From positions 37,663 through 101,662 of the forward strand of contig NIVC01001348.1 of the NCBI GenBank assembly GCA_002269645.1: a stretch of DNA of 64,000 bases, given 5' to 3'. Shown piece by piece: positions 9,084 through 41,700 of this stretch. The notes under the pieces are model-generated. The model was not told the DNA's origin and searched no databases. It saw nothing but the letters and a program-made list of their open reading frames with translations. The stretch is from Macrostomum lignano (lineage: Eukaryota). The position numbers were made by a program, and so were the translations under genes. The stretch's first letter is position 1; each line of letters opens with the position of its first letter.

Positions 9084-9114
<31 letters not shown>

Positions 9115-24220: not shown

Positions 24221-25029
24221 TGCCTCATCAGATTTTCTATTTCTAGGCCACACCCTAAATCTCTTAAATTCTTTTTTCTCCATCTCTAGACGTCGCTAGA
24301 TCTCATGCTAGGTTTTTAGACTTTTCTCAATACATAAAATATTTACTCTTTAGATTTTCTATAGATGCTGGCTAAATAATTCATTGGCCAACTACCATTC
24401 GAGAATATATTGATTTCAACTAAGTGTATTTTTAAGCCTCTTGGCGTGTGTGGCATCTACAGCAGAGAAGGCGTAAATTTACTTGGGAATTGAGACTCTT
24501 CAACCAATTTTCTCCATTTAGCCAAATAAAATCTCAGAGACACTTCATCGGGCACTTTGAGTGGTGAGAAAATTTTCAGCAAATTACTGCAACTCGACTC
24601 TGAAGGACTGACTAATGTCATTTGTTGGCTGAGGAAATTCACTCATCTAGTCTGGGACAGCGGGTCTGGGCAGCATTAGGTCACACTACTACATATAGAT
24701 GATGTTCGAGAGGCACTTTGCCAAGGCTTAGGGATGTCACTAGCTACAGTATACCTCTAGCTGGCACAAATGGATACACAAATCAGTCAGTCACTGGCCA
24801 GCTTTGGAAATTAGGGATTACGCAACGTTGCAGAATGGATTAGGCAATCTCGGCTAAGAAAGCAGTAACTAAGAGAGAGGGCAAATACTGTTGCTTTTCT
24901 GGTGGAATTTTCTGCAGGAAGATTGGCAGTCTGAGGGAAGGAGCAGCACTAATTGATTTGGCGGCAAACTTCCCGTCAGCACCAGCAGGCTTTAGTTATA
25001 CTGCAGTGCCGGTATTTCTGGATGTTTCA

Positions 25030-26270
25030 GTCAGCTCACTCAGCTCCGCAACCATTAGGATCCGCTCACTCAGCTCCGCAACCATTAGGATCCGCTCACT
25101 CAGCTCACTCAGCTCCGCAACCATTAGGATCCGCTCACTCAGCTCCGCAACCATTAGGATCCGCTCACTCAGCTCCGCAACCATCAGAATCGCCTCACTC
25201 AGCTTCGCAACCATCAGAATCGCCTCACTCAGCTCAACAACCATCAGAATCGCCTCACTCAGCTCAACAACCATCAGAATCGCCTCACTCAGCTCAACAA
25301 CCATCAGAATCGCCTCACTCAGCTCAACAACCATCAGAATCGCCTCACTCAGCTCAACAACCATCAGAATCGCCTCACTCAGCTCAACAACCATCAGAAT
25401 CGCCTCACTCAGCTCAACAACCATCAGAATCGCCTCACTCAGCTCAACAACCATCAGAATCGCCTCACTCAGCTCAACAACCATCAGAATCGCCTCACTC
25501 AGCTCAACAACCATCAGAATCGCCTCACTCAGCTCAACAACCATCAGAATCGCCTCACTCAGCTCAACAACCATCAGAATCGCCTCACTCAGCTCAACAA
25601 CCATCAGAATTGCCTCACTCAGCTCAACAACCATCAGAATTGCCTCACTCAGCTCAACAACCATCAGAATTGCCTCACTCAGCTCAACAACCATCAGAAT
25701 TGCCTCACTCAGCTCCGCAACCATCAGAATCGCCTCACTCAGCTCAACAACCATCAGAATTGCCTCACTCAGCTCCGCAACCATCAGAATCGCCTCACTC
25801 AGCTCAACAACCATCAGAATCGCCTCACTCAGCTCAACAACCATCAGAATCGCCTCACTCAGCTCAACAACCATCAGAATTGCCTCACTCAGCTCAACAA
25901 CCATCAGAATTGCCTCACTCAGCTCCGCAACCATCAGAATCGCCTCACTCAGCTCAACAACCATCAGAATTGCCTCACTCAGCTCCGCAACCATCAGAAT
26001 CGCCTCACTCAGCTCAACAACCATCAGAATCGCCTCACTCAGCTCAACAACCATCAGAATCGCCTCACTCAGCTCAACAACCATCAGAATCGCCTCACTC
26101 AGCTCAACAACCATCAGAATCGCCTCACTCAGCTCAACAACCATCAGAATCGCCTCACTCAGCTCAACAACCATCAGAATCGCCTCACTCAGCTCAACAA
26201 CCATTAGGACCCACTCACTCAGCTTCGCAACCATCAGAATCGCCTCGCTCAGCTCAACAACCATTGGGAC
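25030..26270. repeat. Minisatellite, 30-bp unit AGCTCAACAACCATCAGAATCGCCTCACTC
   Basis: ~1.2 kb array. ORFs in three frames arise because the unit is a multiple of 3. Confidence 0.96.
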
Positions 26271-27339
26271 TTACCCACAATAGAGACGTAAAAACAAAGC
26301 ACTGATAACTTACCGGCTTGAAAAAGTAAAGACGCCACCAGACGCAGAAAGATCTAGTAGACAAGAAGTCACAATGTTAGAATTGTAAACTGTCGAAGCA
26401 GATTATTTTTAATAATCTTTTTCCTTCCCGCAGTTCTTACTCTGCTTTCTGGACGCTTAAAGGTGTAGCCTCTATAGAGAGAGAGATAGGGTGGAGAAGG
26501 ACTGAATAGGTGAGAGTGGCTGTTGGGCGGAAAGGCAGCTTGAGCGAAGCAAAACTCAAATCTATGAGCCCCTTTAGTGTGTGTGTGTGTGGGCCCGCCT
26601 CTATTCAGGTCTGGATTGTTCTGCCGTCGGCAAGTCCACAGAGAGAATGACAGAATTAGCTACTATTTATGAACTACTGCCAGAGTGTTCAGCAGCTTAC
26701 GGGTGCGCTGAGTGAGAGTTTTACAGAATTTGTCAACGCTTTTCTGGTTAGCGAGCGCTTCTTCTCTTCAACCTCCCCCCCCCCCCGCTCTTATGATTGG
26801 ACTCGGCCTGGAAGGCCAACCAAGCGAACCAGCAGAGTCCCGGTTCATGGGCTATTATAGACTGAATCTGGACAACTTTTGGCCACGGAAGGTGGACTTT
26901 CTGGTAGATCTAGCCCCCCTCCCCTCGATGGTGCCCCCCTGATGGAGCCCTTGAGCTTGCTTCATCACAACTTGCACACAATCTAGCGTTGTAAATCTGG
27001 AAAATTTCATATACAGGCACTTTATAGAAATAGCTCCAGTCCAGACTTATAAGTTTGAGTAGTCCCTGGCTGTCTGTCAGCCACACCGACAGCATTGAAT
27101 GTAAAAACAAATTCTTTTAGTTGTCTCTTGTCTCTTCTCTATTCATTCAAACTAATTTATCATCTAAAAGTAGCTTTCACTTCTGCGGGGCCTCAAAGGC
27201 TCAGACACAATGGCAGGTAAGAAGACCTTGTAGTCAGTTTCCGGATAAATTTTTGCGAGAATGTGCAACTAAAGTCATTTATATTGTTTGAGAATCCAGC
27301 CAGTTTGCCTTTGACGACCTACCGGGTGTTTCGTGAGAA

Positions 27340-28075
27340 CTTCGGCCAGGGGGTATCTTGTCGAGAATCTATGGGTATTGTAATAAGAATCTAGGCCAGG
27401 GGGTATCTTGTCGAGAATCTATGGGTATTGTAATAAGAATCTAGGCCAGGGGGTATCTTGTCGAGAATCTATGGGTATTGTAATAAGAATCTAGGCCAGG
27501 GGGTATCTTGTCGAGAATCTATGGGTATTGTAATAAGAATCTAGGCCAGGGGGTATCTTTTCGAGAATCTATGGGTATTGTAATAAGAATCTAGGCCAGG
27601 GGGTATCTTTTCGAGAATCTATGGGTATTGTAATAAGAATCTAGGCCAGGGGGTATCTTTTCGAGAATCTATGGGTATTGTAATAAGAATCTAGGCCAGG
27701 GGGTATCTTTTCGAGAATCTATGGGTATTGTAATAATAATCTAGGCTAGGGGGTATCTTTTCGAGAATCTATGGGTATTGTAATAAGAATCTAGGCCAGG
27801 GGGTATCTTTTCGAGAATCTATGGGTATTGTAATAAGAATCTAGGCCAGGGGGTATCTTTTCGAGAATCTATGGGTATTGTAATAATAATCTAGGCTAGG
27901 GGGTATCTTTTCGAGAATCTATGGGTATTGTAATAATAATCTAGGCTAGGGGGTATCTTTTCGAGAATCTATGGGTATTGTAATAATAATCTAGGCTAGG
28001 GGGTATCTTTTCGAGAATCTATGGGTATTGTAATAATAATCTAGGCTAGGGGGTATCTTTTCGAGAATCTATGGG
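27340..28075. repeat. Minisatellite, 50-bp unit GGCCAGGGGGTATCTT(G/T)TCGAGAATCTATGGGTATTGTAATAAGAATCTA
   Basis: Copies at 27361, 27411 etc. No spacers, so not a CRISPR array. Confidence 0.96.
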
Positions 28076-28179
28076 TGTTTTGATGAGATCGATCGATATT
28101 TTCAAATATAGGTTATGGTAGGCAAAGTTTCTTAAATAATTTTAGCGAATTATCATGTCTCACTCTACCCTGGGTATTC

Positions 28180-28395
28180 TAACGAGTCAGGGAGGGTATT
28201 CTCCTGGGTCAGGGAGGGTATTCTACTGGGTCAGGGAGGGTATTCTACTGGGTAAGGGAGGGTATTCTACAGGGTCAGGGAGGGTATTCTCCTGGGTCAG
28301 GGAGGGTATTCTACTGGGTCAGGGAGGGTATTCTACTGGGTCAGGGAGGGTATTCTCCTGTGTCAGGGAGGGTATTCTCCTGTGTCAGGGTCAGT
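28180..28395. repeat. 22-bp G-rich repeat GGGTCAGGGAGGGTATTCTACT
   Basis: Direct repeat with three GGG runs per unit, so potentially G-quadruplex forming. Confidence 0.9.
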
Positions 28396-30019
28396 AATTT
28401 TCATGAAACAGCTGGTTAAAAACAAACAGGTACAAAGTAACAACAAATAACGGCATTAAGATTGCTAGTGTCTTGATCAAAATGAAATCGTGCAAAGGAA
28501 ATTAATATAAGCTTATAGTTTTGTATATATTTATTTGAAAAAAAAGTTTTTTTGGATAAACAAATAACAGAAAAAAACAGAAGTAAAAAAGCAGATGAAT
28601 CAACGCACTGAAGCAATCGCATAAGAAATTAACAATCAACAGTTGTAGCGCGAGTGAATGGGACAAGTTTTGAGGGAATTAAAGGGGATAACCGTATCCA
28701 AAATACCGGCTGAGTTAAAGTTTGCAAACAAAGTTAATCGAATTCGCCAAACAAACACAAAATTTGGTTTGAATTTGCGCTGTAAAGTAATGCAGTCTCA
28801 GTTCTATCTCTGGGATAAGAAAAGGAAAAGTAAAGAACTCAAATGATCAATCTACGAATCAGTCAGCCTCTTTAAGAAAACTGTTAATAAACTATATAAT
28901 ATTTGCTACAATCGTAGTCGAAGAAAAACAAAGAAGAAGCAAAGCAACAAGTGCCAGAAATAAGAAGTACAGAGAAAACACATAGCCAGATTATAATTAA
29001 TTCAAATTTAAACAATAAACAAGTTAGTTATAACTTTTACTGTGAAACATAAATACATATTGCTAGAAGGAATATTAAAAAAGAAATGAAAAAATACTAA
29101 AAGACAAGTATTAAAAAGGACATATTGTACTCTAATAGCTGACAATGGATGCCACATCACGTCAGTTAATAAGAATGACAGTTTCCAATCGAAATACGCA
29201 GATCAAATATTATCTCTTGCCAAGGTAGAAAAATCTGCTTTCTAAAGCTAATAATTTAGTATCGGTAATGCGATAATTATTGAGGAATAATTATCTAATC
29301 AAGCGCCTTTGAGTCGAAAAAAATTTGCAGTATAAAAAACAAGCATAATAAAAATAACAAAAAAGAAAAACTCTATCCCTGCTGCTCCTACTCGGCACCG
29401 CAAAATACTACTAACCGAAGTAATTTAGTAAGTAGTGTACTGCAGGCAAAATATTTGTTTAGCGTTGAATTTATAAAGTTGGCTGTGTTAATACAGTCGA
29501 TGCTAGCTGTTAATAAATAGAGACATGACATTTCAAGTTAACCGAGAAAGAGATTCAAACAAGCAGCTCCGGCAACTGTAACGGGCAATGTCGCTATTGA
29601 AGTTTATCGTACAGCTATTCTGGGAGAACCCGAACGATAAGAGAGGACACGAAACCAAACAAATAGTTGTTGAACCGCGGGTTAATCGATTGCAGAAGTG
29701 ACAATATCAAATAAATGAATCTTATTAGTCAACAAATTAAAAAATTATAGACAAGTAAATGAAATTAATAAATAAACAATATACACACAAAATAAAACAC
29801 GGCAATTAAAATTACACATGCAAAATCTAATCGAGTGTAAAGAAAATGTTGTGATTATATTATGAAAAAAGACGCAACAAAAATAACATTTTATAGGAAT
29901 TTTGAGAATAATTGCGGCCACAAAATGACCGCATTCCGCTTCTGGTAATTGTTGACAGTGCGTTGCTTGGCAATAAATTATCTGTTTTTGATTCGTTTGT
30001 GCAATTGTACTTTTGTAGC

Positions 30020-30720
30020 TCACTGAGTGGAGTGAGGTGGCTGGCGGGGTGGCTGGCGGAGTGAGGTGGCTGGTGGAGTGAGGTGGCTGGCGGAGTGAGG
30101 TGGCTGGTGAAGTGAGGTGGCTGGTGGAGTGAGGTGGCTGGCGGAGTGAGGTGGCTGGTGGAGTGAGGTGGCTGGTGGAGTGAGGTGGCTGGTGGAGTGA
30201 GGTGGCTGGTGGAGTGAGGTGGCTGGCGGAGTGAGGTGGCTGGCGGGGTGGCTGGTGGAGTGAGGTGGCTGGCGGAGTGAGGTGGCTGGTGGAGTGAGGT
30301 GGCTGGTGGAGTGAGGTGGCTGGTGGAGTGAGGTGGCTGGCGGAGTGAGGTGGCTGGCGGGGTGGCTGGCGGAGTGAGGTGGCTGGCGGGGTGGCTGGCG
30401 GAGTGAGGTGGCTGGTGGAGTGAGGTGGCTGGTGGAGTGAGGTGGCTGGTGGAGCGAGGTGGCTGGTGGAGTGAGGTGGCTGGTGGAGTGAGGTGGCTGG
30501 CGGGGTGGCTGGTGGAGTGAGGTGGCTGGCGGGGTGGCTGGCGGAGTGAGGTGGCTGGCGGGGTGGCTGGCGGAGTGAGGTGGCTGGTGGAGTGAGATGG
30601 CTGGCGGAGTGAGGTGGCTGGCGGGGTGACTGGTGGAGTGAGGTGGCTGGCGGAGTGAGGTGGCTGGCGGGGTGACTGGTGGAGTGAGGTGGCTGGCGGA
30701 GTGAGGTGGCTGGTGGAATG
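30020..30720. repeat. G-rich minisatellite, 17-bp GGAGTGAGGTGGCTGG(T/C) with 12-bp variant
   Basis: Direct tandem repeat. Confidence 0.95.
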
Positions 30721-31547
30721 ATGTGGCTGGCGGAGTAAAATGGCTGATAGCAGCGATTCCAGTGGGTGGATAAAAGTAACTGCAACCGCATTTTGCAACT
30801 TTTAGCAGAAGCAGAACAATGGATATGGCGGATGGAGATAACAAAGGACTAGACAAAAAAAATCATAAGTATGGCCAGAACTTTGCCTACATTTTTCGAG
30901 TACAAAGCCAGAAATTCATTGAAAAACGGTCGAAAACGAAGCGCAAAAGTGCTAAATCAAAGAGTTAGGCGGGATAAATCAAAGACAAACTGAAAATATC
31001 GTATAAAAACGCTAGTTAAATATTGTTTATGAAAAATATGAAGTTATATAATACCGAAAGAAGTACACGAGGAACCTCTGGATCAGATATACAAAATGAA
31101 AATCAATTAGCTATAAAGATAAGATATAGCAATTATAAATTTCGTGAGTGTCAGTTGAAGAAAGCTGAAAATCATACAGATTAAAGCATAACAAACAGTT
31201 TTTCACGCGTTAGAAAAATTGATAAACCAAACACAGCTGTACTATAAGAGATCGAGCAGAAAATCAAAGGCTACATGGATAAAAATTATTATTGTCTAAA
31301 TAATCTCTAAGCATTGTATTATAATAAACAAATAGGAGATTGGCAAACCGAACAAAATAAAAAAAGTGAATACCCACGGTAAATTTGCTATTGCTATTGC
31401 ATAAGGGCCGCGAATTCGTTACAATATGCTGAAGAGTTGTCCTTAAAAAGGCCGTTTTTTTTAAATTTATGTCAAATTTATAGTTTTTTCCTCACAGCTA
31501 ATTTTTGCTTTTTACTTGCACTAATTGATTACACCTGCTACAATTTG

Positions 31548-31806
31548 GCCAGATGTGCAACCGACAGCTCAGCCGCAGCTATTGCGCGGCGCATCTGAAG
31601 GCTGTTCAGTCCAAGGACTGGGGGGGGGGTCGCCACGCACAGCCTCAATTACCCCAGCTAATGCTGGCACCCATTTTACAGCTGGGTGAACTGAAGCAAT
31701 GCAGAGTTAAGTGTCCTGCTCAAGGACACTTAATTGTTCCAGTGGGATCGGGAATCGAATCCCCGACCTTCCAGTCGTGAGTCCGACGCTCAAACCACTA
31801 GGCTAC
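31548..31806 (-). mobile_element. Full-length tRNA-derived SINE (family A)
   Basis: Minus strand starts GTAGCCTAGTGGTTTGAGCG (A box) ... GGATTCGATTCCCG (B box). This is followed by GTGTCCTTGAGCAGGACACTTAAC..CACCCAGCTGTAAAATGGG, which resembles conserved central domains of metazoan SINEs. Second copy at 11923. Confidence 0.82.
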
Positions 31807-33046
31807 AATCTGCTCTTGCACAAAAATTCATATTATTAATTCATTATTTTAATTTTGACGACCATGTGTTGGTATTAGTGCGTGTTCTTAAAAGGGCCGT
31901 TTCAAGAACATAGCAATATTTAGCTCTGAGCAGCCCCTGAGTAGGCATCAACAAAAAAAATTAGCTGGTAGGAAAGCGAATTTAATTGAAAATAAAACAA
32001 AGAAAACAGATTATTGAAAAAAGAAATTAAAAAAATACTTTTTGTTCTTGTAAAGCTACACTGAACCAGCTAATATAGAATGTAGGATGGAAGGCAAAGA
32101 ACAAAATAGCAAGTAAATAGAACAAGCCAACTGTAAAAAAACAGAGATTATGTTTTAATGTTTCATTAACTTTCATAACAGAAACAGCAAATCAGATAGG
32201 AGTATCGAACCGGGCTTCTGCAATCCAAGCACAACAGCTTCGGCTTGTCTCCAATAAATTTAATTGATCGCTACATTGGCCAGCGGCAGTTGAAACACAA
32301 TTATTTATCAACATATTTTTGGATAGCCTGTGCGCTGTCAGTTAGCAAGAAAATCTATGCAATAAACTAAATTGTATGGAACGCTGACAAACTACTGTTA
32401 GTAGCTAAGTGACGCATTTTAATCGAGGTTTTTTTTTAGAAAAAAGAACTGTATTATCATATTATAAAGTATGCACAGAGGCCTGTGCCAATAGCCAGGG
32501 TAAGCTAAGTAGGTCGCAAATAGAAAGAGCGTAGAAACCAGAAGGTAATTAAAAATTCAATATAACAATAAATTGCATTTCATCTTGAAAGCAAAGTAAA
32601 CATGTTTTAAATAATATTGTATCAAACGGGTGCCAATAGAAAAAATACAAATTGAAACGGTTATTGTCTGTCTATACTACTGGCAGTAGCAGTAGTAGTA
32701 GTAGTAGTAGAAAAATACATTAAATTCATGGCAGAAAGGAGCCAAATTAATTAGAAAAATAATCCGTAAAAATTAATTTAAAAAAGTAACAAATTATAAA
32801 ATAAAATTAAAACAAATCAAAACGATCGGATACAGGAGGCTACAAACCAGCAGATTAAAAAAATAACAGCAATTCACAACAGATAAGTTTATAACACAAA
32901 CTGAATAGCTAATTTAGGAATATAAAAAACATCAATAAGACAGGCAGACAAACAAAAACAAAAGAACTCGTCACTTTCCTCTTCGAAATCATGCCAGAGT
33001 ACTTCTTTACCTTAAAGTTCCTTGATAATTGAATAACATTTTCTTT

Positions 33047-33067
33047 CTACTCCTGCTTCTGCTCCTG

Positions 33068-33116
<49 letters not shown>

Positions 33117-35657
33117 TGCTGCTGCGGCTGCGGCAGGGCCGCGGGCAGCGGAGAGCCAGCCAGCTCGAACAGCTGCTGCAGACCGACAGAGCGACCGCCA
33201 GTCACCAGCAGCACAATGTTGGCCGACTGCGGCCTGGCCAGCTGGCCCGGCCCCACGTGTCGGCCATAGACAGCGGCCAGAGCGGCGCCGCAGACCGGCT
33301 CAGTCAGCAGCTGGTGCTGGCAAAGGAAGCTGACGCTGGCCTTGGCCGCCTCATCCTGGCTGCAGGTCACCGAGTGCAACGGCTGCTCGCGGGCCGCGTC
33401 CAGCGCCCGCTGGCACGGCCGGCCGACTCCGCCGCCGCCGCCACCATCGAGGCAGCCGCCGTTGGTCGTTCGCAGCTCGGCGGCGATCACCGGCGTGGTG
33501 ACCCAGCCGTAGCGCCACAGGCCGGACACGACGCCGGACAGTAGGCCGCCGCCGGACACAGGCAAAACGATAGCGTCGGGCTGTTCGCCGTTCAACGCCT
33601 CGGCGAGTTCGTCAACCAGGCCGCTGTAGCCCGTCCAGACGTCCTCGCTGTCGAACGGGTGCAGCAGGCAGACGGAGCGGCCCAGCTGGCCGGCCAGCAG
33701 CTCCGCTTGGCTGTGCGCCTCGGGCCAGTCGGCGCCGTGCAGCAACACCTGGGCGCCTTCGTCGGCGATGCGAGCGCGAGCCTCTTGGGCTACGGCGGCA
33801 TCGTTGGCATTGGACGCGGCTGATTCGGGCAGCACGACAGTGCACTGCAGGCCGAGACGGGCAGCCGAGTAGGCGCAGGCCAAGCCGGAGTTGCCGGCGC
33901 AGCTGCTGCTGGTCACCACCTATTTATTTATTGATTGAAAGTAAGTTTAAAAAATACAGATAATGTCCTGACTAACTACTGAAGAAACGCATGTTGAGTA
34001 GCATTAAGATATCGTGTTTCCTAGAAATTCCTACAACTGTGACTAAAATTTGTTGCAATAGTTTACAGTTAAAGCGCCATTCAGCTGAAAAGATACATCT
34101 GATTTGCGAAATTTATAATTTTCTTTGCTTTTTATCCTTCACGTCTGAATTTTGGATACTATTGTATGTGTTGTGATAAGTTTTTGCACCCCGTTGCAGT
34201 CTGCTATCTGGAACAAGCCATTTGCTTTTGACCATACAGGCAAAGCATTTTAAACCATCAGCCTGATTATAGTTCTGCCATATTGATGCAATAATGTTCT
34301 GCCGTCATGATTTTTAAAGGTGAAAGCTTGCAGTCTGCCTGAGGATTAAGAGGTTGGGATTCCCTGAAAGTTAGGAGGTATTAAATGACTACCTGAAGGT
34401 TAGGAGGTGCTAAATGACTACCTGAAGGTTGGGGGGTGTTAAATGACTACCTGAAGGTTGGGAGGTGTTAAAGGACTACCTGAAGGTTGGGAGGTGTTAA
34501 AGGACTACCTGAAGGTTGAGAGGTGTTAAATGACTATCTGCAGGTTGGGAGGTGTTAAATGACTTCCTGAAGGTTGGGAGGTGTTAAAGGACTACCTGAA
34601 GGTTGGGAGGTGTTAAAGGACTACCTGAAGGTTGAGAGGTGTTAAATGACTATCTGCAGGTTGGGAGGTGTTAAATGACTACCTGAAGGTTGGGAGGTGT
34701 TAAAGGACTACCTGAAGGTTGGGAGGTGTTAAATGACTACCTGAAGGTTGGGAGGTGTTAAAGGACTACCTGAAGGTTGGGAGGTGTTAAAGGACTACCT
34801 GAAGGTTGAGAGGTGTTAAATGACTATCTGCAGGTTGGGAGGTGTTAAATGACTTCCTGAAGGTTGGGAGGTGCTAAATGACTACCTGAAGGTTGGGAGG
34901 TGTTAAATGACTACCTGAAGGTTGGGAGGTGTTAAATGACTACCTGAAGGTTGGGAGGTATTTAACGATTACCTGAGGATTGAGAGTAAAATAGCGCCAT
35001 AAACTCACGTGAGTGAAGCCCCGCTCAGCGGCCCGCCGCACGGCGTGAGCCATGCCGCGCAGGCACACGGACCCAGTTGGCTGGCAATTCTCCAGTTTGA
35101 GCCAAACGCGGCAGCCTTTGATGCCCATAGCTCTGGCCAGTGGCCGACTTTCAATCAGCGGAGTCCGCACGTGCAGCGGCAGCGGCGCCGGGACGCCAGC
35201 CGATGCGGCGGCCGCGGTGGCCAAGTCCGGGCACAGCAGGCCCAGCTGCGACAGAGCAGTCAGGGCGTCGTGCGGCGGCGAGTCCAAACTCGAGCCGTTG
35301 CTAGACAGCGAGACGTCAAGGTCGGAGGTGATCTCCTTGTGCCCGGCCAGTCTGTGCCCGCCATTGCCGCCGCCGCCGCTACCGCCGCCGCCACCACCGA
35401 TGCCGTTGCTAGTGAGAGTGCGGAAAGCGTTCTGCGTGCCCAGAGCGTTGAAAATGAGCAGGCTGTCAACCATTTCCTCTATGCCAGCCTGCGTGCCGCC
35501 GAAGCCGAAGCTGCCGCTGCCGCCGCCCCAGTTGGACTGTCGGAGTCCAGCAGGCGGCTGAGACCACCGAATCTGCGGCGCGATTGGGTTTGAAGATTTG
35601 AGATGAGATGAGCGATCTGGATCTGTCAGCGGCGCTCTGGCCTGCTGTACTTTTGCA
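33047..35657 (-). CDS. Serine dehydratase/threonine deaminase (SDS/SDSL, PLP fold II)-like domain lacking the PLP lysine; probably the 3' exons of the RRM gene; poly-Gln tail
   Basis: Exons 35657-35009 and 33919-33047. Motifs LHVRTPLIES, VWLKLENCQPTGSVCLRG, SSCAGNSGLACAYSA, HPFD..VWTGY, IVLPVSGGGLL, LTEPVCGAALAAVYG, VLLVTGG. Confidence 0.88.
34360..34975. repeat. Intronic minisatellite, 29-bp unit; sense strand GTAGTCATTTAACACCTCCCAACCTTCAG
   Basis: Direct tandem repeat, ~20 copies by length. Confidence 0.95.
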
Positions 35658-35719
35658 CTGGGTTGGGGTGCCATAGAAATAAACTTAACGATTACGTATG
35701 CGCCTCTCAGCCTCGGTCT

Positions 35720-36830
35720 TTTTGTCTGTCTGTCTTAGTGTCTGCTTGTCTGTTTTTTTAGTGTCTGTCCGTCTGTCTTAGTGTCTGCTTGTCTGTTTTT
35801 TTAGTGTCTGTCCGTCTGTCTTAGTGTCTGCTTGTCTGTTTTTTTAGTGTCTGTCCGTCTGTCTTAGTGTCTGCTTGTCTGTTTTTTTAGTGTCTGTCCG
35901 TCTGTCTTAGTGTCTGCTTGTCTGTTTTTTTAGTGTCTGTCCGTCTGTCTTAGTGTCTGCTTGTCTGTTTTTTTAGTGTCTGTCCGTCTGTTTTAGTGTC
36001 TGCTTGTCTGTTTTTTTAGTGTCTGTCCGTCTGTCTTAGTGTCTGTTTGTCTGTTTTTTAGTGTCTCTCCGTCTGTCTTAGTGTCTGCTTGTCTGTTTTT
36101 TAGTGTCTGTCCTTCTGTCTTAGTGTCTGCTTGTCTGTTTTTTTTAGTGTCTGCCCGTCTGTCTTAGTGTCTGCTTGTCTGTTTTTTTTGTGTCTGCCCG
36201 TCTGTCTTAGTGTCTGCTTGTCTGTTTTTTTTTGTGTCTGCCCGTCTGTCTTAGTGTCTGCTTGTCTGTTTTTTTAGTGTCTGCCCGTCTGTCTTAGTGT
36301 CTGCTTGTCTGTTTTTTTAGTGTCTGCCCGTCTGTCTTAGTGTCTGCTTGTCTGTTTTTTAGTGTCTGTCCGTCTGTCTTAGTGTCTGTTTTAGTGTCTG
36401 ATTAGTGCCTGTCTTAAAGTCTGTCTGTCTGGCAGTTTTAGTGTCTGTCTGTCTGCCTTAGTGTCTGTCTGTCTGCCTTAGTGTCTGTCTGTCTGCTTTA
36501 GTGTCTGTCTGTCTGCTTTAGTGTCTGTCTGTCTGATTTAGTGTCTGTCTGTCTGCTTTAGTGTCTGTCTGTCTGCTTTAGTGTCTGTCTGTCTGATTTA
36601 GTGTCTGTCTGTCTGCTTTAGTGTCTGTCTGTCTGCTTTAGTGTCTGTCTGTCTGCTTTAGTGTGTCTGTCTGCTTTAGTGTCTGTCTGTCTGTCTGATT
36701 TAGTGTCTGTCTGTCTGCTTTAGTGTCTGTCTGTCTGCTTTAGTGTCTGTCTGTCTGATTTAGTGTCTGTCTGTCTGCTTTAGTGTCTGTCTCTGTCTGT
36801 GTTAGTGTCTGTCCTAGTGCCTGTTTTTAG
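35720..36830. repeat. Intronic minisatellites, ~43-bp and ~24-bp TAGTGTCTGTC-based units
   Basis: Direct tandem repeats. Confidence 0.93.
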
Positions 36831-37570
36831 TATTTGTCTGTCTTATTTGGCCTGTCTTCTGTCGTCTTAATTTCTGCCTGAATCTGGCTTAATGTTTCTT
36901 CAGTATATTCATATCTGTTTTTTATGTCTTACTAGTAGTGACTTAGTGACCGAATGTCTGCCTGTCTTAATATCGTGTCCATCCGTCTGTCCTTCTGTCC
37001 GTATTCATGCCAGTTTATTTTTACACATCTATATATAGATAGCTCGTATCCCAAAGATCGAAGCAACCACGCTTTGCATTTTGGCCCGCTAGTCGGAAAT
37101 GATCGGAAATCGATAACATCGATAATTTTACACAGGTAATCTCAAGCAGAAGTCTTTTTGCACAGCATTCCTCGCCTAAATTTCTGTTTAAGAAGCTGTC
37201 TCAACACTAAGCTCAGACTGTCCTACGTGTGTCGCCCCTAATATCAATGCTCGAGACTTAAGGGCCTTAGGCTCGATTCTTAGCGTAGCATACCAGCTGT
37301 AAAGCAAGCCAATGCTAGAAATGTACAATTCCCCCGACAACAAGCCAAGTTAAATTAAACATCAGCCTGTCTGTAACATAAAGCGTATTTCACAAATATA
37401 AATTACAGAACCAGCTACACCAAGGTGAAGGTTTCCAAATTCGATGCTAATCTCTGCCGAATTTCCGTCGGCTAAAGCCGATCCTTTACCCACCTGTCTG
37501 GCCAAGCCGCAGTGCGGGTCAAGGGGCGAACAAACAAGTTGAACAACACGAAGCTATGAAGAGTTATTTT

Positions 37571-37571
<1 letters not shown>

Positions 37572-37652
<81 letters not shown>
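37572..37652. repeat. (CT)n/(GA)n microsatellite
   Basis: Direct sequence. Confidence 0.98.
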
Positions 37653-37654
<2 letters not shown>

Positions 37655-38054
37655 ACAGTAAGCTACGCCGCACAAGATCGCATTGCACAATGCATAATAA
37701 AATTTGTAAAAGCAAAGATTTCGCTTCGTTATTATTAGTTGTAAAACTGAATTGCTGCTGCTGTAGCCTAAGAGAGAGTGGGAGAGAGGGGGGCAGGGGT
37801 AGGTGGCCATTGTCAGATAGGGAGCTTACACACTTGCAGGGTACTGCACCTGTGCACCTTAATTTCTGTGCTAGTGAGGGCAACTATAGAAGAGCCGTGT
37901 TTCAATGTAGTAACACTGTTAAAAAGTGACCATTTTTATTACCTTTATCTCTGCCCACTTCATTCTTAATTCCTAGTCGATTTTTTAATACTCCTTTGAA
38001 GAACACCGATGCGCTGTAAAATTCTTTGGCATTTTGACATATAGAGTCTTCGAG

Positions 38055-38680
38055 GGGCACCAGTCCTCTCCCAGCTCTATTAGATCAGACACCAGTCCTC
38101 TCCCAGCTCTATTAGATCAGACACCAGTCCTCTGCCAGCTCTATTAGATCAGACACCAGGCCTCTCCCAGCTCTATTAGATCAGACACCAGTCCTCTCCC
38201 AGCTCTATTAGATCAGACACCAGTCCTCTCCCAGCTCTATTAGATCAGACACCAGTCCTCTCCCAGCTCTATTAGATCAGACACCAGGCCTCTCCCAGCT
38301 CTGACACCAGGCCTCTCCCAGCTCTGTTAGATCAGACACCAGTCCTCTCCCAGCTCTATTAGATCAGACACCAGTCCTCTCCCAGCTCTATTAGATCAGA
38401 CACCAGGCCTCTCCCAGCTCTGTTAGATCAGACACCAGTCCTCTCCCAGCTCTGTTAGATCAGACACCAGGCCTCTCCCAGCTCTGTTAGATCAGACACC
38501 AGTCCTCTCCCAGCTCTCTTAGATCAGACACCAGTCCTCTCCCAGCTCTATTAGATCAGACACCAGGCCTCTCCCAGCTCTGTTAGATCAGACACCAGTC
38601 CTCTCCCAGCTCTGTTAGATCAGACACCAGTCTTCTCCCAGCTCTGTTAGATCAGACACCAGTCCTCCCCCAGCTCCCCA
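38055..38680. repeat. Intronic minisatellite, 32-bp unit CAGTCCTCTCCCAGCTCTATTAGATCAGACAC
   Basis: Copies at 38061, 38093 etc. Confidence 0.95.
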
Positions 38681-38700
38681 GCTCAAACAGCAGTGCTCAC

Positions 38701-41700
38701 CCGCCGGAGCCGAAGCCAGAGGAGCCGTTGAGGCCCGGGCTGGGGCCGCACAGGCTGGCGCTAAGCCGGCAGCCGGAGGCGCCCCCGGCCGCAGCGGCGC
38801 CCAGACCGGCCGAGTCACGTTGCCGCCCGGTGTCCAGCGGCAGGTTGAACGAAGCGGACAGGCCGGCGTGGCGCGGGCCGGACCGGGCCCTGGCCGAGCC
38901 GTCCTCGGCGAATTTCACCAGCAGCGGGGCCGGCCACTCAGGTCCCTGGATTGGAGCAAAATGCAAACATGTATTACAAACAGTTAGTACACAGCTCCTC
39001 AGTACACAGACCCTCATACATGAACCCTCAGTACACAGCCCCACAGTACACAGACCCTCAGTACACAGACCCTCAGTACACAGACCCTCATACATGAACC
39101 CTCAGTACACAGCCCCACAGTACACAGACCCTCAGTACACAGACCCTCAGTACACAAACCCTCAGTACACAGACACTCAGTACACAGCCCCACAGTACAC
39201 AGACCCTCAGTACACAGACCCTCAGTACACAGACCCTCAGTACACAGACCCTCAGTACACAGACACTCAGTACACAGACCATCAGTACACAGACCCTCAT
39301 ACATGAACCCTCAGTACACAGACCCTCAGTACACAGACCCTCAGTACATAGACCCTCAGTGCACAGACCCTCAGTACACAGACCCTCAGTGCACAGACCC
39401 TCAGTACACAGACCCTCAGTACACAGACCCTCAGTACACAGACCCTCAGTACACAGACCCTCAGTACACAGACCCTCAGTACACAGACCCTCAGTGCACA
39501 GACCCTCAGTGCACAGACCGTCATAAATGAACCCTGTCTTATCTAATTCTACGAAAAAACGTTTCCCAAATCAGTTAGGAAGTGACCTACAAAAGTGTTT
39601 TGATAGTCCTTCAACTATATTAGAATTCAACTTCGAATTGCCCGATCAAGGCCGGCTAGCGGCATGAAGTATTGCATTAGCAAGGCGGGGAATTTTCATT
39701 TTAAGCACCAAAATTGGCTATTACATCTTGTTTTGGACTTCTAAAAAGCATTTTGATCGGAAGTAATTACACAATTGAATACTAATCGAAAGATTTTCTA
39801 AGGTCAGCATCCGATAGCTACGAACTTTATATATAGATATAGACAATTAATTAAAGTACAGAGAAAACTTTTGAATCGAAGAATTTTCTATTCGAAGATA
39901 GGACAAGCTAGATAGCCTAGCTAAGTCTGCAGTAATATTATATAGAGTTTGTGAGTGCCCATTATTTTCCCACACTTTCATCACATGCTGTTACGAGTAT
40001 TGCGCTGCAGTGAGATAAAAAATTGCAATTGTGAATGTCGTCAGTCAAAGCTTAGTATGCAGTACTTGTGCTCGAAGAGCGCACCCCCTGTCGCTGTCGC
40101 TATTCTCAGCACCCCAAGATGAACAATAGAATATAATATAATGTACAAATAAGAAGCAAGCATATTATTACATCACGTAGGCAAAATTATACAGTAGAAT
40201 ATAATGACGGAACTTTACAGATGATTTAAGAACACTGGTTAATAGGAAGGCGAAACGCTTACACTAGTGGGGCTACACTACACCAGCTGATCAGCGTCCA
40301 GGCCAGCAAACAGGAGGAGGGAGGAGACAATTTCAAGCAATAATGACAGCCCCAGTAAAGTACAATGAGTCAGCCTTCTCTCTCTCTCTCTCGCACACAC
40401 AGACACACCGAGAAGACAAGCTGAGTACAGTCGCATTAGTAAGAGGCGGCTATGGTGGGAAGTCTCACAATGGGTCTGCGCACTGATGAGTGAAACCGGC
40501 CTCCCCCCCGTATTTCTCCCGTAGGCATATAATAAAATAGCTAAAAGCTCCAACTGAGAGCAGAGAGCGAGCGAGACAGGGGAGCTCAGGGGGGGGGGTG
40601 AGCAGAGAACCGCGCTCTGAGCCCAGGTGAGAGGCTCATTTCAGGCATTAAAAAAACCATTGAACCAAACACACACAGAGTTGGTGGGGTAGACTAGGCT
40701 TTGGCTACAAAAAACTGCGGTGGTCCGCGACCTACAGTAGGCTATTAATAGTGAAAATGTACGCTGAGATGACGCAAAGCAGCTGAGGTGATGAAGAGTA
40801 CAGGGAGACACTCAATTTTTCTAAGAGCAGAACTTTGTTCTATTTATCACACATTATAAAATCTGACTCACATTTTTTGGGCCAGCATTAGCGTTTTTTC
40901 TTGCTTTAATTAAACAGCAGTTATCAATCATATAATGCACATTTAAGTTGTTCAGATCTATGAGTTAGCAGGTACAGCCGGTTATAAGGCGAGATGGTCA
41001 GATAATACATTGTAAAGCTTATGTGGATAATATGCGGATATAGATACGTACTTTAATCTTTAAAACCTATATTCTTTTTAACGACCACAATTTATCAAGG
41101 CAATGCAGTAACAGCCCGAGATTCGATTGCAAGCCAGCAAACAACGGAAATGGCATGGCAATGGCGTATAGTTAAAGACAAAGTGTACAATAAAGGTCAC
41201 CGTTATGGCGACTAGCTAAAATTGAATGTTAGTGTAAGAGAATCTCTAGTCTGTTTATAAGCAGAATTCAGGCAAGCAAACCACTATTGATATGAGGTGT
41301 GCAGCAAGCCTACCCTCTCAGATGTTCAGATGAGACACAGCTACCATCTCAGATGTTCAGGTGAGACACAGCTACCATCTCAGATGTTCAGGTGAGACAC
41401 AGCTACCATCTCAGATGTTCAGATGAGACACAGCTACCATCTCAGATGTTCAGGTGAGACACAGCTACCATCTCAGATGTTCAGATGAGACACAGCTACC
41501 ATCTCAGATGTTCAGGTGAGACACAGCTACCATCTCAGATGTTCAGGTGAGACACAGCTACCATCTCAGATGTTCAGGTGAGACACAGCTACCATCTCAG
41601 ATGTTCAGGTGAGACACAGCTAGCTACCATCTTAGATGTTCAGGTGAGACACAGCTACCATCTCAGATGTTCAGGTGAGACACAGCTACCATCTCAGATA

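What the first reader, a model, noticed from the sequence alone, without database searches (positions are those of the whole stretch)
33047..35140. The SDS-like domain looks like a pseudoenzyme: PLP Schiff-base lysine replaced
Seen: KLENCQPTGSVCLRG where SDS/threonine dehydratases have KxEnxQxxGSFKIRG, so the catalytic Lys is Cys. The phosphate loop reads VSGGGLL rather than VGGGGLL. The segment equivalent to human SDS TSVAKALG is replaced by a Gly run (CLDGGGGGGVG), and the C-terminal CGG is TGG. Fold motifs (AGNSG, PFD, EPVCGAALAAVY) are intact and both exons are stop-free, which suggests retention for a non-catalytic role such as dimerisation, ligand sensing or scaffolding.
Basis: partly seen in the sequence, partly recalled or inferred. 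Interest (0 to 1): 0.8.

Follow-up and report, generated by a model that had tools for sequence, protein, structure and literature searches.

The report
Dead serine-dehydratase domain on flatworm RNA-binding protein
The flagged stretch of flatworm (Macrostomum lignano) DNA encodes a serine-dehydratase-like domain that has lost the lysine that holds its vitamin-B6 cofactor, and it forms the tail of an ELAV-type RNA-binding protein found in at least seven flatworm species, several of which lost the same lysine, apparently independently.

Summary
On the minus strand, two exons (35009-35572 and 33047-33919) encode a PALP/serine-dehydratase (SDS) fold. The PLP Schiff-base Lys is Cys (TGC, 35063-35065), the stacking Phe is Val, the phosphate loop reads SGGGL, the Asn loop has a 2-residue insertion, the ITSVAKALG loop is deleted and replaced by a Gly run, and Cys303 is Thr.

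This is not an assembly error. All three near-identical M. lignano copies carry TGC, and the active paralog has AAG.

The domain is the C-terminal part of a 4-exon gene whose first exon encodes an ELAV/Hu-type RRM1-RRM2 tandem. The SDS-like domain sits where ELAV proteins have RRM3. The same fusion occurs in trematodes, cestodes and a monogenean. Three trematodes keep the Lys. Trichobilharzia (Glu), Mesocestoides (Val), probably Echinococcus (Ala) and Macrostomum (Cys) have lost it.

The fold is confidently predicted. Synonymous changes outnumber nonsynonymous ones, and the domain evolves at about the rate of its active paralog.

Best reading: a retained non-catalytic module, acting in dimerisation and/or ligand binding, on an RNA-binding protein.

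Caveat: the window's own copy has a 1-nt deletion in a G run that uncouples the RRM exons from the SDS exons. It may be an assembly error or a real frameshift.

The parts
42899..43606 (-). Exon 1. It encodes an ELAV/Hu-type RRM1, a Gly-rich inter-RRM linker and RRM2. The start codon is uncertain (ATG at 43604-43606 or 43574-43576). The donor is CAG|GTGAGA.
   Evidence: tblastn of P0001 aa 1-230 gives 100% identity. Pfam RRM_1 x2, E 2.5e-36. HuR RRM1-2 (4ed5) E 1e-43, then HuD, HuC and Sxl. Coordinates.
38701..38945 (-). Exon 2. It encodes the end of RRM2 ([14 protein letters not shown]) and the start of a low-complexity Gly/Ser/Ala linker.
   Evidence: tblastn of P0001 aa 229-312. Splice sites ..tccag|GGACCT and GGCGG|gtgagc.
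35009..35572 (-). Exon 3. It encodes the linker (including the IEEMVDSLL(I/M)FNALG motif) and the first 57 residues of the SDS-like domain. The acceptor is ccgcag|A and the donor CAC|GTGAGT (phase 0).
35526..35529 (-). Run of four G (mRNA sense) where the other two genomic copies have five. This 1-nt deletion shifts the frame between the RRM exons and the SDS-like part in this copy.
   Evidence: Three-locus DNA alignment. The translation reading from exon 1 hits a stop. Coordinates.
35479..35481 (-). TAG stop reached in this copy when reading in the frame set by exons 1-2.
35471..35473 (-). ATG used by the deposited 429-aa model for this locus (Mlig003997g1, PAA69090.1, MVDSLLIF...). UniRef names this model 'L-serine ammonia-lyase'.
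35054..35098 (-). KLENCQPTGSVCLRG, the degenerate PLP-lysine motif. Val (35066-35068) replaces the ring-stacking Phe40 and Cys (TGC, 35063-35065) replaces the Schiff-base Lys41.
34363..34976 (.). 29-bp minisatellite (21 copies) inside intron 3 (33920-35008). It is not coding.
   Evidence: The introns of the three copies differ mainly in array length.
33047..33919 (-). Exon 4, the rest of the SDS-like domain, a poly-Gln tail and the stop codon (33047-33049). It contains the Asn loop SSSCAGNSG (33884-33910), the phosphate loop VSGGGLL (33539-33559), the Gly-run replacement loop CLDGGGGGGVG (33422-33454), EPVCGAALAAVY (33266-33301), and LLVTGGRS (33188-33211), in which Thr replaces Cys303.
   Evidence: The AF2 model has pLDDT 91.3 and is weak only at the Gly-run loop.

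Best explanation
The region encodes the C-terminal domain of a flatworm-specific RNA-binding protein. The protein has an ELAV/Hu-type RRM1-RRM2 tandem, a long low-complexity linker, and a serine-dehydratase-like (fold-type II PLP, PALP) domain where ELAV proteins carry RRM3.

In Macrostomum lignano the domain has lost the Schiff-base lysine (Lys to Cys), the ring-stacking Phe, part of the phosphate and Asn loops, and the whole loop that carries two K+ ligands and covers the cofactor. It therefore cannot carry out PLP-dependent Ser/Thr deamination (shown from sequence; activity not assayed). A separate canonical SDS paralog with all motifs intact exists in the same genome.

The dead domain keeps its fold and is under purifying selection, so it is retained for a non-catalytic job.

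Most likely role (inferred, not shown): it supplies the self-association surface of a normally dimeric enzyme fold. It would then stand in for the multimerising RRM3 of ELAV proteins, so that the protein binds RNA as a dimer. It may also still bind a small ligand in the remnant pocket (PLP, or a PLP-amino-acid adduct held non-covalently).

The fusion predates the split of Macrostomorpha from the parasitic flatworms. Catalytic competence was apparently ancestral, because three trematodes keep all motifs, and it was lost independently at least three times.
For: Identity and architecture:
- The window is M. lignano NIVC01001348.1, which is locus L003.
- P0001 (779 aa, RRM_1 + PALP) maps as four colinear exons.
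- Pfam finds 2x RRM_1 (E 2.5e-36) and PALP (E 4e-52).
- The N-terminal half matches HuR RRM1-2 at E 1e-43.
- The gene models come from a genome-guided transcriptome that is cut at trans-splice sites (PMC5730564).

Dead active site:
- Searches show 15 of 69 family-conserved columns changed, including F40, K41, S65, A68, G168, L223, V225 and C303.
- The named motif columns are hit 8/19 against 7/50 elsewhere, p=0.02.
- Residue roles are taken from PMC555945.
- There is no alternative Lys.

Not an artefact:
- TGC is present in all three copies.

Fold kept:
- AF2 pLDDT 91.3 and pTM 0.91.
- The top Foldseek hits are human and rat SDS and SDSL, TM 0.82-0.85.

Constraint:
- Among the three copies, 12 codon differences are synonymous and 4 nonsynonymous (binomial p=2.6e-5 for the whole gene; 2 nonsynonymous of 7 changes in PALP, p=0.018).
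- Against the active paralog, the first 37 codons are 31/37 identical in protein with dS about 1.1 and dN 0.12. Over the whole domain dN is 0.50 and dS 1.36.
- Tajima relative-rate tests show roughly equal rates with 7 of 9 outgroups.

Family:
- Dicrocoelium, Fasciola and Paragonimus keep GSFKIRG and GGGG. Trichobilharzia has GSFEIRG and Mesocestoides GSVVLRG.
- Dicrocoelium, Trichobilharzia and Mesocestoides have the RRM + PALP architecture. The Fasciola and Paragonimus models are N-terminally truncated, and Pfam finds only PALP in Fasciola.
- P0001 against the Dicrocoelium protein is colinear end to end, E 2e-104.
- E. multilocularis EmuJ_001093200 hits both SDS and ELAV-like proteins, and its qPCR primer reads QPTGSVA.
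- Lys is otherwise present in 418 of 419 non-family sequences.

Precedents:
- The C. elegans CBS-1 N-terminal PALP module cannot bind PLP and is non-catalytic (PMC3316156).
- ELAV RRM3 is implicated in multimerisation (PMC2795745).
Against: - No experiment or structure shows dimerisation, ligand binding or RNA binding for this protein.
- The AF2 confidence is partly inherited from an alignment of active homologues.
- The selection tests are low-powered. There are only 17 changes among near-identical copies that may undergo gene conversion, and dS against the paralog is near saturation and sums both lineages.
- In the NJ tree the M. lignano fused domain groups weakly (61%) with the M. lignano canonical paralog rather than with the neodermatan fused domains. 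A single origin of the fusion therefore rests on the RRM and linker colinearity, not on the SDS tree.
- The window's own copy is frame-broken between the RRM and SDS parts.
- No orthologue from another Macrostomum or a planarian was available.
- No expression data for this gene were found.
Confidence: 0.62

Rival explanations
1. This particular locus is a broken duplicate. The 1-nt deletion in the G run is real, so the window copy cannot make the RRM-SDS fusion. It yields at most a truncated two-RRM protein, and possibly a free 429-aa SDS-like protein from an internal ATG. The two other copies (L001, L002) carry the function.
For: The window has GGGG where L001 and L002 have GGGGG, and the RRM frame hits TAG 30 codons into exon 3. 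The depositors called only a 429-aa product here. The DV1 line carries extra large chromosomes and the assembly holds 180 Mb of blocks at least 95% identical, so redundant copies are expected to be free to decay (PMC5730564).
Against: Homopolymer deletions are the typical residual error of PacBio/Canu assemblies, and Pilon polishing is weak where reads map to several copies (method; the error profile is my own knowledge). Apart from the indel, the window copy differs from the others by 3 synonymous changes and 1 conservative change (M/I), with no sign of decay. This rival does not change what the domain is, because all copies share the Cys.
Confidence: 0.35
2. The dead domain acts as a regulatory partner ('prozyme') of the active enzyme. 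It heterodimerises with the canonical M. lignano SDS paralog, modulating or localising real Ser/Thr dehydratase activity, for instance by tethering it to RNA-protein complexes.
For: A canonical paralog with all motifs intact is present in three copies (P0002, P0120, P0121). The two proteins share 31/37 identical residues at the N-terminal segment despite saturated synonymous sites. Dead paralogs that activate their live partners by hetero-oligomerisation are known, for example trypanosomatid deoxyhypusine synthase (PMC3663545, listed).
Against: The conserved TPLIESRPL and WLKLE segment is also conserved in bacterial SDS homologues, so it reflects ancestral constraint rather than co-evolution. 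For E. multilocularis the authors' BLAST found only one SDS/TD-like gene, the fusion itself. If that holds, Lys-less cestode proteins have no live partner. No interaction data exist.
Confidence: 0.12
3. The domain is still an enzyme. It would use non-covalently bound PLP or the new Cys, or catalyse a different PLP-independent reaction.
For: Asn67, three of the four loop glycines, Leu172 and a hydroxyl residue (Thr) at the N1-contacting position are kept. The pocket could therefore still hold PLP. Two new Cys sit in the former active site, at the Lys position and in the Asn-loop insertion.
Against: The Schiff-base Lys is essentially invariant in this family (418/419 outside the fusion family). 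It is required for transimination and proton transfer in fold-type II enzymes (established enzymology, my own knowledge). Phe40 and the K+/lid loop are also gone. Other lineages replaced the Lys with Val, Glu or Ala, so no common new chemistry is apparent.
Confidence: 0.05
4. The fusion is an annotation artefact. The RRM gene and the SDS-like gene would be neighbouring, separately translated genes (an operon or trans-spliced unit), and the SDS-like gene would be a slowly decaying relic.
For: Many M. lignano transcription units are polycistronic precursors (PMC5730564). An older model (A0A1I8I0G4, 215 aa) stops exactly at the end of exon 2. The window copy is annotated as SDS-like only.
Against: Exon 2 splices in frame into exon 3 at a canonical acceptor in the two intact copies, giving 779- and 781-aa ORFs. 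The TBONE pipeline, which cuts at trans-splice sites, did not cut these models. The same colinear architecture is called independently in Dicrocoelium, Trichobilharzia, Mesocestoides and Echinococcus. Synonymous changes outnumber nonsynonymous ones.
Confidence: 0.05

Closest known systems
Mammalian L-serine dehydratase / SDS-like (human SDS 1p5j and 4h27, SDSL 2rkb, rat SDS 1pwe and 1pwh)
   Same: Same fold-type II PALP fold: 34-36% identity over the full domain, E about 1e-44, predicted TM 0.82-0.85. Asn67, GGG-L, Glu194 and the EPxCGAAL motif are kept.
   Different: Lys41 is Cys, Phe40 is Val, Gly168 is Ser and Cys303 is Thr. The Asn loop has a 2-residue insertion and the 218-225 loop (K+ ligands Leu223 and Val225) is deleted. 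The domain is fused behind two RRMs and ends in poly-Gln.
M. lignano canonical SDS paralog (Mlig001465g1 / Mlig016438g1; P0002, P0120, P0121)
   Same: 43-44% identity by BLASTP and the closest relative in all searches. It shares the phase-0 intron just before VV(S/T)SS.
   Different: The paralog is a stand-alone 324-337 aa protein that keeps GSFKIRG, GGNAG, GGGGL, the ITSKATSLG loop and CGG, and 66 of 69 conserved columns. It has one extra intron.
ELAV/Hu proteins (HuR, HuD, HuC) and Sex-lethal
   Same: RRM1-RRM2 tandem with ELAV-type RNP motifs. HuR 4ed5 scores E 1e-43 across both RRMs.
   Different: There is no hinge plus RRM3; an SDS-like domain takes that place. The inter-RRM linker is about 45 residues and Gly-rich. 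RNP-1 of RRM1 reads LCYGFVDF. The protein is not melav2, the described M. lignano elav-like gene (422 aa, three RRMs; its primers are absent from the window).
RRM + SDS-like fusion proteins of parasitic flatworms (Dicrocoelium CAH8561339/52, Fasciola TPP66525, Paragonimus P879_11148, Trichobilharzia CAH8830505, Mesocestoides VDD76155, Echinococcus EmuJ_001093200)
   Same: Same colinear architecture and unusual RRM1 sequence ([13 protein letters not shown]...[11 protein letters not shown]), and 35-45% identity in the SDS-like domain. Lys is also lost in Trichobilharzia (E), Mesocestoides (V) and probably Echinococcus (A).
   Different: Three trematodes keep Lys and all motifs. The parasites have a large insertion in RRM2 and a conserved C-terminal extension (..LNPHDLVNFSKLL..) instead of poly-Gln. 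Only M. lignano has deleted the 218-225 loop.
C. elegans CBS-1 N-terminal module (a dead fold-type II PLP module)
   Same: A PALP module that cannot bind PLP or catalyse, kept within a larger protein (PMC3316156).
   Different: It comes from a different PALP subfamily (CBS) and is fused to a live copy of itself rather than to RNA-binding domains.

Membership tests
L-serine/L-threonine dehydratase (SDS/SDSL, EC 4.3.1.17/19) | Fold-type II PLP (PALP, PF00291) fold | tested here: met
   Pfam E 1.6e-52. AF2 pLDDT 91.3. Foldseek top hits are SDS and SDSL, TM 0.82-0.85.
L-serine/L-threonine dehydratase (SDS/SDSL, EC 4.3.1.17/19) | Schiff-base lysine in the S-x-K-x-R-G motif (Lys41) | tested here: not met
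   GSVCLRG, with Cys encoded by TGC at 35063-35065 in all three genomic copies. No substitute Lys.
L-serine/L-threonine dehydratase (SDS/SDSL, EC 4.3.1.17/19) | Phosphate-binding loop GGGG(L/M) (168-172) | tested here: inconclusive
   The loop reads SGGGL. The first Gly, which is also a K+ ligand, is Ser, and the rest is kept. Whether phosphate can still bind is unknown.
L-serine/L-threonine dehydratase (SDS/SDSL, EC 4.3.1.17/19) | S(A/G)GNA loop that hydrogen-bonds PLP | tested here: inconclusive
   Asn is kept, but the loop reads SSSCAGNSG, with a 2-residue insertion and Ala68 changed to Ser.
L-serine/L-threonine dehydratase (SDS/SDSL, EC 4.3.1.17/19) | Cys303 contact to the pyridine N1, and the K+ site (Gly168, Glu194, Ala198, Ser200, Leu223, Val225) | tested here: not met
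   Cys303 is Thr. The Leu223/Val225 loop is deleted, Gly168 is Ser, and Glu194 is kept (residue roles from PMC555945).
L-serine/L-threonine dehydratase (SDS/SDSL, EC 4.3.1.17/19) | Ser/Thr deaminase activity and a 410-420 nm aldimine absorbance | not testable with these tools
   This needs recombinant protein.
ELAV/Hu family RNA-binding proteins | RRM1-RRM2 tandem of ELAV type | tested here: met
   HuR 4ed5 E 1e-43, HuD 1fxl E 1.4e-42, both RRMs aligned. Pfam RRM_1 x2.
ELAV/Hu family RNA-binding proteins | Hinge followed by a third RRM | tested here: not met
   There is no third RRM by Pfam. A PALP domain occupies the C-terminus.
Pseudoenzyme (dead paralog retained under selection) | Loss of essential catalytic residue(s) with the fold retained | tested here: met
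Pseudoenzyme (dead paralog retained under selection) | Purifying selection after loss of catalysis | tested here: met
   Among the copies, 12 synonymous against 4 nonsynonymous codon differences (p=2.6e-5; PALP alone p=0.018). dN/dS is about 0.1 in the N-terminal segment and about 0.37 overall against the paralog. Evolutionary rate is roughly equal to the active paralog. Power is modest.
Pseudoenzyme (dead paralog retained under selection) | Expressed as a stable protein | not testable with these tools
   The models derive from RNA-seq-guided annotation (PMC5730564). No protein or expression data for this gene were found.
Flatworm ELAV-like RRM + SDS-like fusion family (not described in the searchable literature) | Colinear RRM1-RRM2-linker-PALP architecture with the [13 protein letters not shown]...[11 protein letters not shown] type of RRM1 | tested here: met
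   P0001 against Dicrocoelium P0371 is colinear, E 2e-104. Architectures. Echinococcus EmuJ_001093200 hits both SDS and ELAV. In the window copy the continuity is broken by a 1-nt indel.

The most novel reading that the evidence does not exclude
Flatworms possess an undescribed class of ELAV-like RNA-binding proteins in which RRM3 is replaced by a serine-dehydratase module. This module would work as an amino-acid or vitamin-B6 sensing and dimerising domain, coupling Ser/Thr or PLP status to post-transcriptional control. Catalysis would be dispensable for that role, which would explain why the Schiff-base lysine was lost independently at least three times (Cys in Macrostomum, Glu in a schistosomatid, Val/Ala in cestodes) while the domain is kept. 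A corollary is that the only 'threonine deaminase' annotated in cestodes such as Echinococcus is not an enzyme at all.
Probability: 0.2. Interest if true: 0.8.

Novelty: new variant of a known kind. Interest (0 to 1): 0.55.

Why it matters
Three points make this more than a routine annotation note.

1. It is a clean natural example of an enzyme fold recruited into an RNA-binding protein and then repeatedly stripped of catalysis. Active and dead versions survive side by side across one phylum, which gives a ready-made comparative system for asking what a dead PLP fold is kept for.

2. It corrects database names. UniRef calls the window's product and its Mesocestoides counterpart 'L-serine ammonia-lyase'. 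The Echinococcus counterpart has been treated as that parasite's threonine deaminase in a metabolic and drug-target study (PMC11795093). The sequence evidence here suggests that the cestode proteins lack the cofactor lysine.

3. M. lignano is a transgenic, RNAi-amenable model, so the proposed functions can be tested directly.

Tried and rejected
- **Assembly error at the Lys codon: rejected.** All three loci read TGC, and the codon differs from AAG at all three positions.
- **Recent gene conversion from the canonical paralog, to explain the 31/37 identical N-terminal segment: rejected.** That segment carries about 13 synonymous differences, with dS about 1.1.
- **The gene is melav2 or melav1: melav2 rejected.** melav2 is 422 aa with three RRMs, and its primers are absent from the window. 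melav1 could not be checked because no sequence was at hand.
- **A substitute lysine: rejected**.
- **Fast neutral decay of the dead domain: not supported** by the relative-rate tests.
- **First homology search.** It was swamped by the poly-Gly and poly-Gln words and missed even vertebrate SDS. The domain-only search and the profile search found no relative closer than the paralog, plus Paragonimus. The word-free representative search is what revealed the parasite fusions.
- **SDS-domain NJ tree.** It does not resolve whether the M. lignano fused and canonical domains are sisters (61%) or whether the fused domains are monophyletic.
- **Literature searches found nothing on this gene or on the fusion architecture.** Terms tried: the gene identifiers, 'Macrostomum' with 'serine dehydratase', and 'serine dehydratase' with 'RNA recognition motif' and 'flatworm'. 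The supplementary files of PMC5816591 also held nothing.
- **Rfam and tRNA scans of the window were empty**.
- **Not attempted:** PLP docking and dimer modelling. The structure tool returns no coordinates and predicts single chains only.
Full report
**1. What the window is**

The best protein match to the translated region is 'hypothetical protein BOX15_Mlig010810g1' of the free-living flatworm Macrostomum lignano (P0001, 779 aa, Pfam RRM_1 + PALP). The window is 100% identical to contig NIVC01001348.1 of assembly GCA_002269645.1 (Mlig_3_7). This is locus L003, and window 45473..23047 corresponds to L003 1..22427.

The gene lies on the minus strand. Introns are AT-rich and packed with minisatellites, and exons are GC-rich.

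**2. The observation**

I spliced the two exons at a GTGAGT donor (exon ends at 35009) and an ..aatag acceptor (exon starts at 33919). The result is an open frame whose PALP domain scores E 1.6e-52 in Pfam. It aligns over its full length with human SDSL (2rkb), human SDS (4h27, 1p5j) and rat SDS (1pwe) at E 5e-45 to 2e-43.

- GSVCLRG against GSFKIRG, with the Cys codon TGC at 35063-35065.
- VSGGGLL against VGGGGLL.
- A Gly run in place of the ITSVAKALG loop.
- VTGG against VCGG.

I built a 39-sequence family alignment and numbered it on human SDS. In that numbering K41, N67, G168-L172, E194, L223, V225 and C303 fall exactly where the literature places them (PMC555945). There are 69 columns that are at least 88% conserved among the 35 Lys-bearing members:
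- The M. lignano fused domain keeps 54.
- Its canonical paralog keeps 66.
- The Lys-bearing fused proteins of Dicrocoelium and Fasciola keep 64 and 65.

The 15 changes are F40V, K41C, S65A, A68S, G168S, T195L, G197T, deletion of S218/A220/L223, V225 (an Ala-consensus column where M. lignano has Val), D248Q, V266T, A269V and C303T. Columns inside the motifs the literature names as PLP or K+ contacts are hit 8/19 against 7/50 elsewhere (Fisher p=0.02). The Asn loop also has a 2-residue insertion.

**3. It is not an artefact and not chance**

The assembly holds three near-identical copies of the gene: L001 (Mlig010810g1), L002 (Mlig003997g4) and L003, the window (Mlig003997g1). This fits the known extra large chromosomes of the sequenced DV1 line and the 180 Mb of duplicated blocks at least 95% identical (PMC5730564).

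All three copies read GTG TGC CTG. The canonical paralog reads TTC AAG ATT, which is six nucleotide differences in three codons.

The exceptions are M. lignano (three copies), Trichobilharzia (three isoforms), Mesocestoides, and one unrelated protein.

The domain has only three lysines:
- The K30 equivalent, which is invariant in active enzymes too.
- One in a variable loop.
- One that is K/R polymorphic between the copies.

No substitute Schiff-base lysine is therefore available.

**4.

P0001 maps to four colinear minus-strand exons:

| Exon | Window coordinates | Content |
|---|---|---|
| 1 | 42899-43606 | RRM1, Gly-rich linker, RRM2 |
| 2 | 38701-38945 | end of RRM2, start of linker |
| 3 | 35009-35572 | linker, first 57 residues of the SDS-like domain |
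| 4 | 33047-33919 | rest of the domain, poly-Gln tail, stop |

The N-terminal half is an ELAV/Hu-type RRM1-RRM2 tandem. HuR 4ed5 scores E 1e-43, followed by HuD, HuC and then Sex-lethal, and Pfam finds RRM_1 twice. ELAV proteins have a hinge and a third RRM at this position; here there is a low-complexity linker and the SDS-like domain.

It is not melav2, the described M. lignano elav-like gene. melav2 is 422 aa with three RRMs, and its primers are absent from the window.

The gene models come from a genome-guided transcriptome that is explicitly cut at trans-splice sites (PMC5730564). Exon 2 joins exon 3 in frame in L001 and L002, giving 779- and 781-aa products.

**5. The window's own copy is frame-broken**

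Relative to L001 and L002, the window has four G instead of five at 35526-35529, in the segment CCAACTGGGG[G]C. Reading from the RRM exons, the frame then runs into TAG at 35479-35481. This explains why the depositors called only a 429-aa product here, starting at the ATG at 35471-35473. UniRef names that product 'L-serine ammonia-lyase'.

I cannot tell whether this is a residual homopolymer error or a real mutation. The assembly was made with Canu from PacBio reads and polished with Pilon in a triplicated region. Otherwise the copy differs from the others by three synonymous changes and one M/I change.

**6. The fusion occurs across flatworms, and the lysine was lost repeatedly**

A word-free HMMER scan of 1.84 billion representatives found long proteins with a C-terminal SDS-like domain. 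Their sequences and names show the same architecture in several flatworms:

| Species | Group | Length | Motif at the Lys site | Other motifs |
|---|---|---|---|---|
| Dicrocoelium dendriticum | trematode | 959/964 aa | GSFKIRG | GGNAG, GGGG |
| Fasciola gigantica | trematode | 728 aa, N-terminally truncated model | Lys kept | |
| Paragonimus westermani | trematode | partial | Lys kept | |
| Trichobilharzia szidati | schistosomatid trematode | 963 aa | GSFEIRG | TGSLA, GDGG |
| Mesocestoides corti | cestode | 848 aa | GSVVLRG | TANAG, GCGS |
| Protopolystoma | monogenean | partial | site missing | |

P0001 and the Dicrocoelium protein align colinearly from RRM1 to the end of the SDS-like domain at E 2e-104. 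They share the unusual RRM1 sequence [24 protein letters not shown] and the RRM2 tail (N)G..(A/G)P(E/D)W.APL.

A published study of Echinococcus multilocularis took its single SDS-like gene, EmuJ_001093200, to be the parasite's threonine deaminase and found it barely expressed (PMC11795093):
- The study's own reciprocal BLAST table lists both serine dehydratases (query cover 0.37-0.40) and ELAV-like proteins (cover 0.16-0.18, 40% identity).
- The forward qPCR primer reads F-L-Q-P-T-G-S-V-A in frame.

This is therefore the same fusion, probably with Ala at the lysine position.

Three trematodes keep every motif, so the ancestral fused domain was most likely a competent enzyme. The lysine was then lost at least three times, with different replacements: in Macrostomum, in a schistosomatid and in cestodes. 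This is inference from parsimony.

In each Lys-less lineage the neighbouring cofactor motifs have also degraded. That pattern is expected of genuine loss of cofactor chemistry.

**7. Is the dead domain maintained?**

- *Copies.* Over 762 codons the three copies show 12 synonymous and 4 nonsynonymous codon differences. Within the PALP domain there are 5 synonymous and 2 conservative nonsynonymous differences (V/A, K/R). With about 73% nonsynonymous sites, the binomial p is 2.6e-5 for the gene and 0.018 for the domain.
- *Paralog.* The first 37 codons of the domain are 31/37 identical in protein to the canonical paralog, while synonymous sites are near saturation (dN 0.12, dS 1.09). This also rules out recent gene conversion. 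Over the whole domain dN is 0.50 and dS 1.36.
- *Rates.* Tajima relative-rate tests give roughly equal numbers of lineage-specific changes in the dead and live paralogs with 7 of 9 outgroups, and at most a 1.8-fold excess with the other two.
- *Fold.* An AlphaFold2 model built on a 74-sequence alignment has pLDDT 91.3 and pTM 0.91. The only weak stretch is residues about 210-229, the Gly-run loop. Foldseek ranks human SDS, rat SDS and SDSL first, with TM 0.82-0.85.
- *Caveats.* The counts are small, the copies may exchange sequence, dS is saturating, and the model's confidence is partly borrowed from active homologues.

**8. Origin within M. lignano**

The canonical SDS paralog (P0002 and two further copies) is a 324-337 aa protein with all motifs intact. 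Its gene (L004) shares with the fused gene the phase-0 intron immediately before VV(S/T)SS, and has one further intron. Both genes therefore descend from an intron-bearing ancestor.

An NJ tree gives these groupings:
- All flatworm SDS sequences together, at 76.5% bootstrap.
- The neodermatan fused domains, at 100%.
- The two M. lignano sequences, weakly, at 61%.

The tree cannot decide whether the canonical gene is an old paralog or a Macrostomum-specific offshoot. A single origin of the fusion rests on the RRM and linker colinearity.

**9. How it most likely works**

*Shown.* The domain cannot form the internal aldimine, and it lacks the stacking Phe and the lid and K+ loop. The fold and many non-catalytic conserved positions are retained. 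The domain is covalently attached to an RNA-binding tandem whose RNP motifs are intact.

*Inferred.* SDS-type enzymes are dimers (my own knowledge of the rat and human structures, not tested here). ELAV RRM3 has been implicated in multimerisation (PMC2795745). The dead module may therefore serve as the self-association domain of this RNA-binding protein. A precedent is the PLP-free, non-catalytic N-terminal PALP module of C. elegans CBS-1 (PMC3316156).

M. lignano keeps Asn67, GGG-L and a hydroxyl residue at position 303, so non-covalent binding of PLP or of a PLP-amino-acid adduct is conceivable. Lysine mutants of other fold-type II enzymes are known to hold such adducts (my own knowledge). 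Ligand sensing therefore remains open.

A 'prozyme' role through heterodimerisation with the live paralog is a weaker alternative. According to the Echinococcus authors' BLAST, cestodes seem to have only the fused gene.

**10. Novelty**

Pseudoenzymes and dead PLP-fold modules are known kinds. An ELAV-like RRM tandem fused to an SDS-like domain, present across flatworms and repeatedly inactivated, was not found in the literature I could search. The proteins exist in databases only as 'hypothetical', 'unnamed' or 'L-serine ammonia-lyase'.

I rate it a new variant of a known kind, of moderate interest. It offers a comparative system of live and dead versions of one fusion, it corrects enzyme annotations in parasites, and it sits in an experimentally tractable model.

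Noticed in passing
window 35526-35529 (G run) and 35479-35481 (TAG): The window's copy of the gene has GGGG where the other two genomic copies have GGGGG. This shifts the frame between the RRM exons and the SDS-like exons. It could be a homopolymer assembly error or a real frameshift in one of three redundant copies.
   Followed up: partly
Not in the window: Echinococcus multilocularis EmuJ_001093200 (PMC11795093, S2 and S4 Tables): The gene treated as the parasite's threonine deaminase ('EmTD') hits both serine dehydratases and ELAV-like proteins in the authors' own BLAST table. Its qPCR primer encodes QPTGSVA. It is therefore the same RRM-SDS fusion and probably lacks the PLP lysine, which fits its lack of detectable role in Thr catabolism.
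   Followed up: partly
window 33422-33454, 33884-33910 and 35063-35065: The former active site has gained two cysteines, one at the Lys41 position and one in the 2-residue insertion of the Asn loop. A third Cys sits at the start of the Gly-run loop.
   Followed up: no
window 35435-35480 (IEEMVDSLLIFNALG) and the linkers of P0371, P0374, P0375, P0376: The otherwise low-complexity linker contains a short acidic-hydrophobic motif. Counterparts in the parasite proteins are MELLDLLDSH, LGILDFLDSH and LELLELLD. It may be a conserved short linear motif.
   Followed up: no
window 33059-33130: The protein ends in a poly-Gln tract whose length differs between the three genomic copies (about 11 to about 22 Gln). 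The parasite orthologues instead carry a conserved C-terminal extension ending ..LNPHDLVNFSKLL...
   Followed up: partly
window 34363-34976, 35723-36843, 38058-38676, 38986-39523, 41310-42861, and elsewhere (e.g. 4700-5900, 8900-10600, 24950-26300, 52600-54400): Introns and intergenic DNA are filled with long minisatellite arrays (periods 15-43 bp). These create many long spurious ORFs on both strands, and array length is the main difference between the three gene copies.
   Followed up: partly
window 50774-55553 (-): The upstream neighbour on the same strand corresponds to a 714-aa gene with faint PPR-repeat hits, annotated at the matching position in L001 and L002. Synteny is therefore kept across all three copies.
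   Followed up: no
(homology searches): Apart from its own paralog, the nearest relatives of the M. lignano SDS sequences by sequence identity are bacterial (Pseudomonas, Sinobacterium and similar, 39-42%). They are about as close as vertebrate SDS/SDSL (36-40%). The NJ tree still places the flatworm sequences together, with a nemertean next to them (38.5% bootstrap). This is probably a slow-evolving ancestral type rather than horizontal transfer, but I did not test it.
   Followed up: no
P0223 (Tubulanus polymorphus, 568 aa), P0277 (764 aa) and P0284 (520 aa): Other eukaryotes also carry SDS domains fused to unrelated modules: PDZ domains in a nemertean, a long LRR-like N-terminus in a Dictyostelium-like protist, and a C-terminal RRM-like tail in P0284. 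All of these keep the Lys. The SDS fold seems prone to domain fusion.
   Followed up: no
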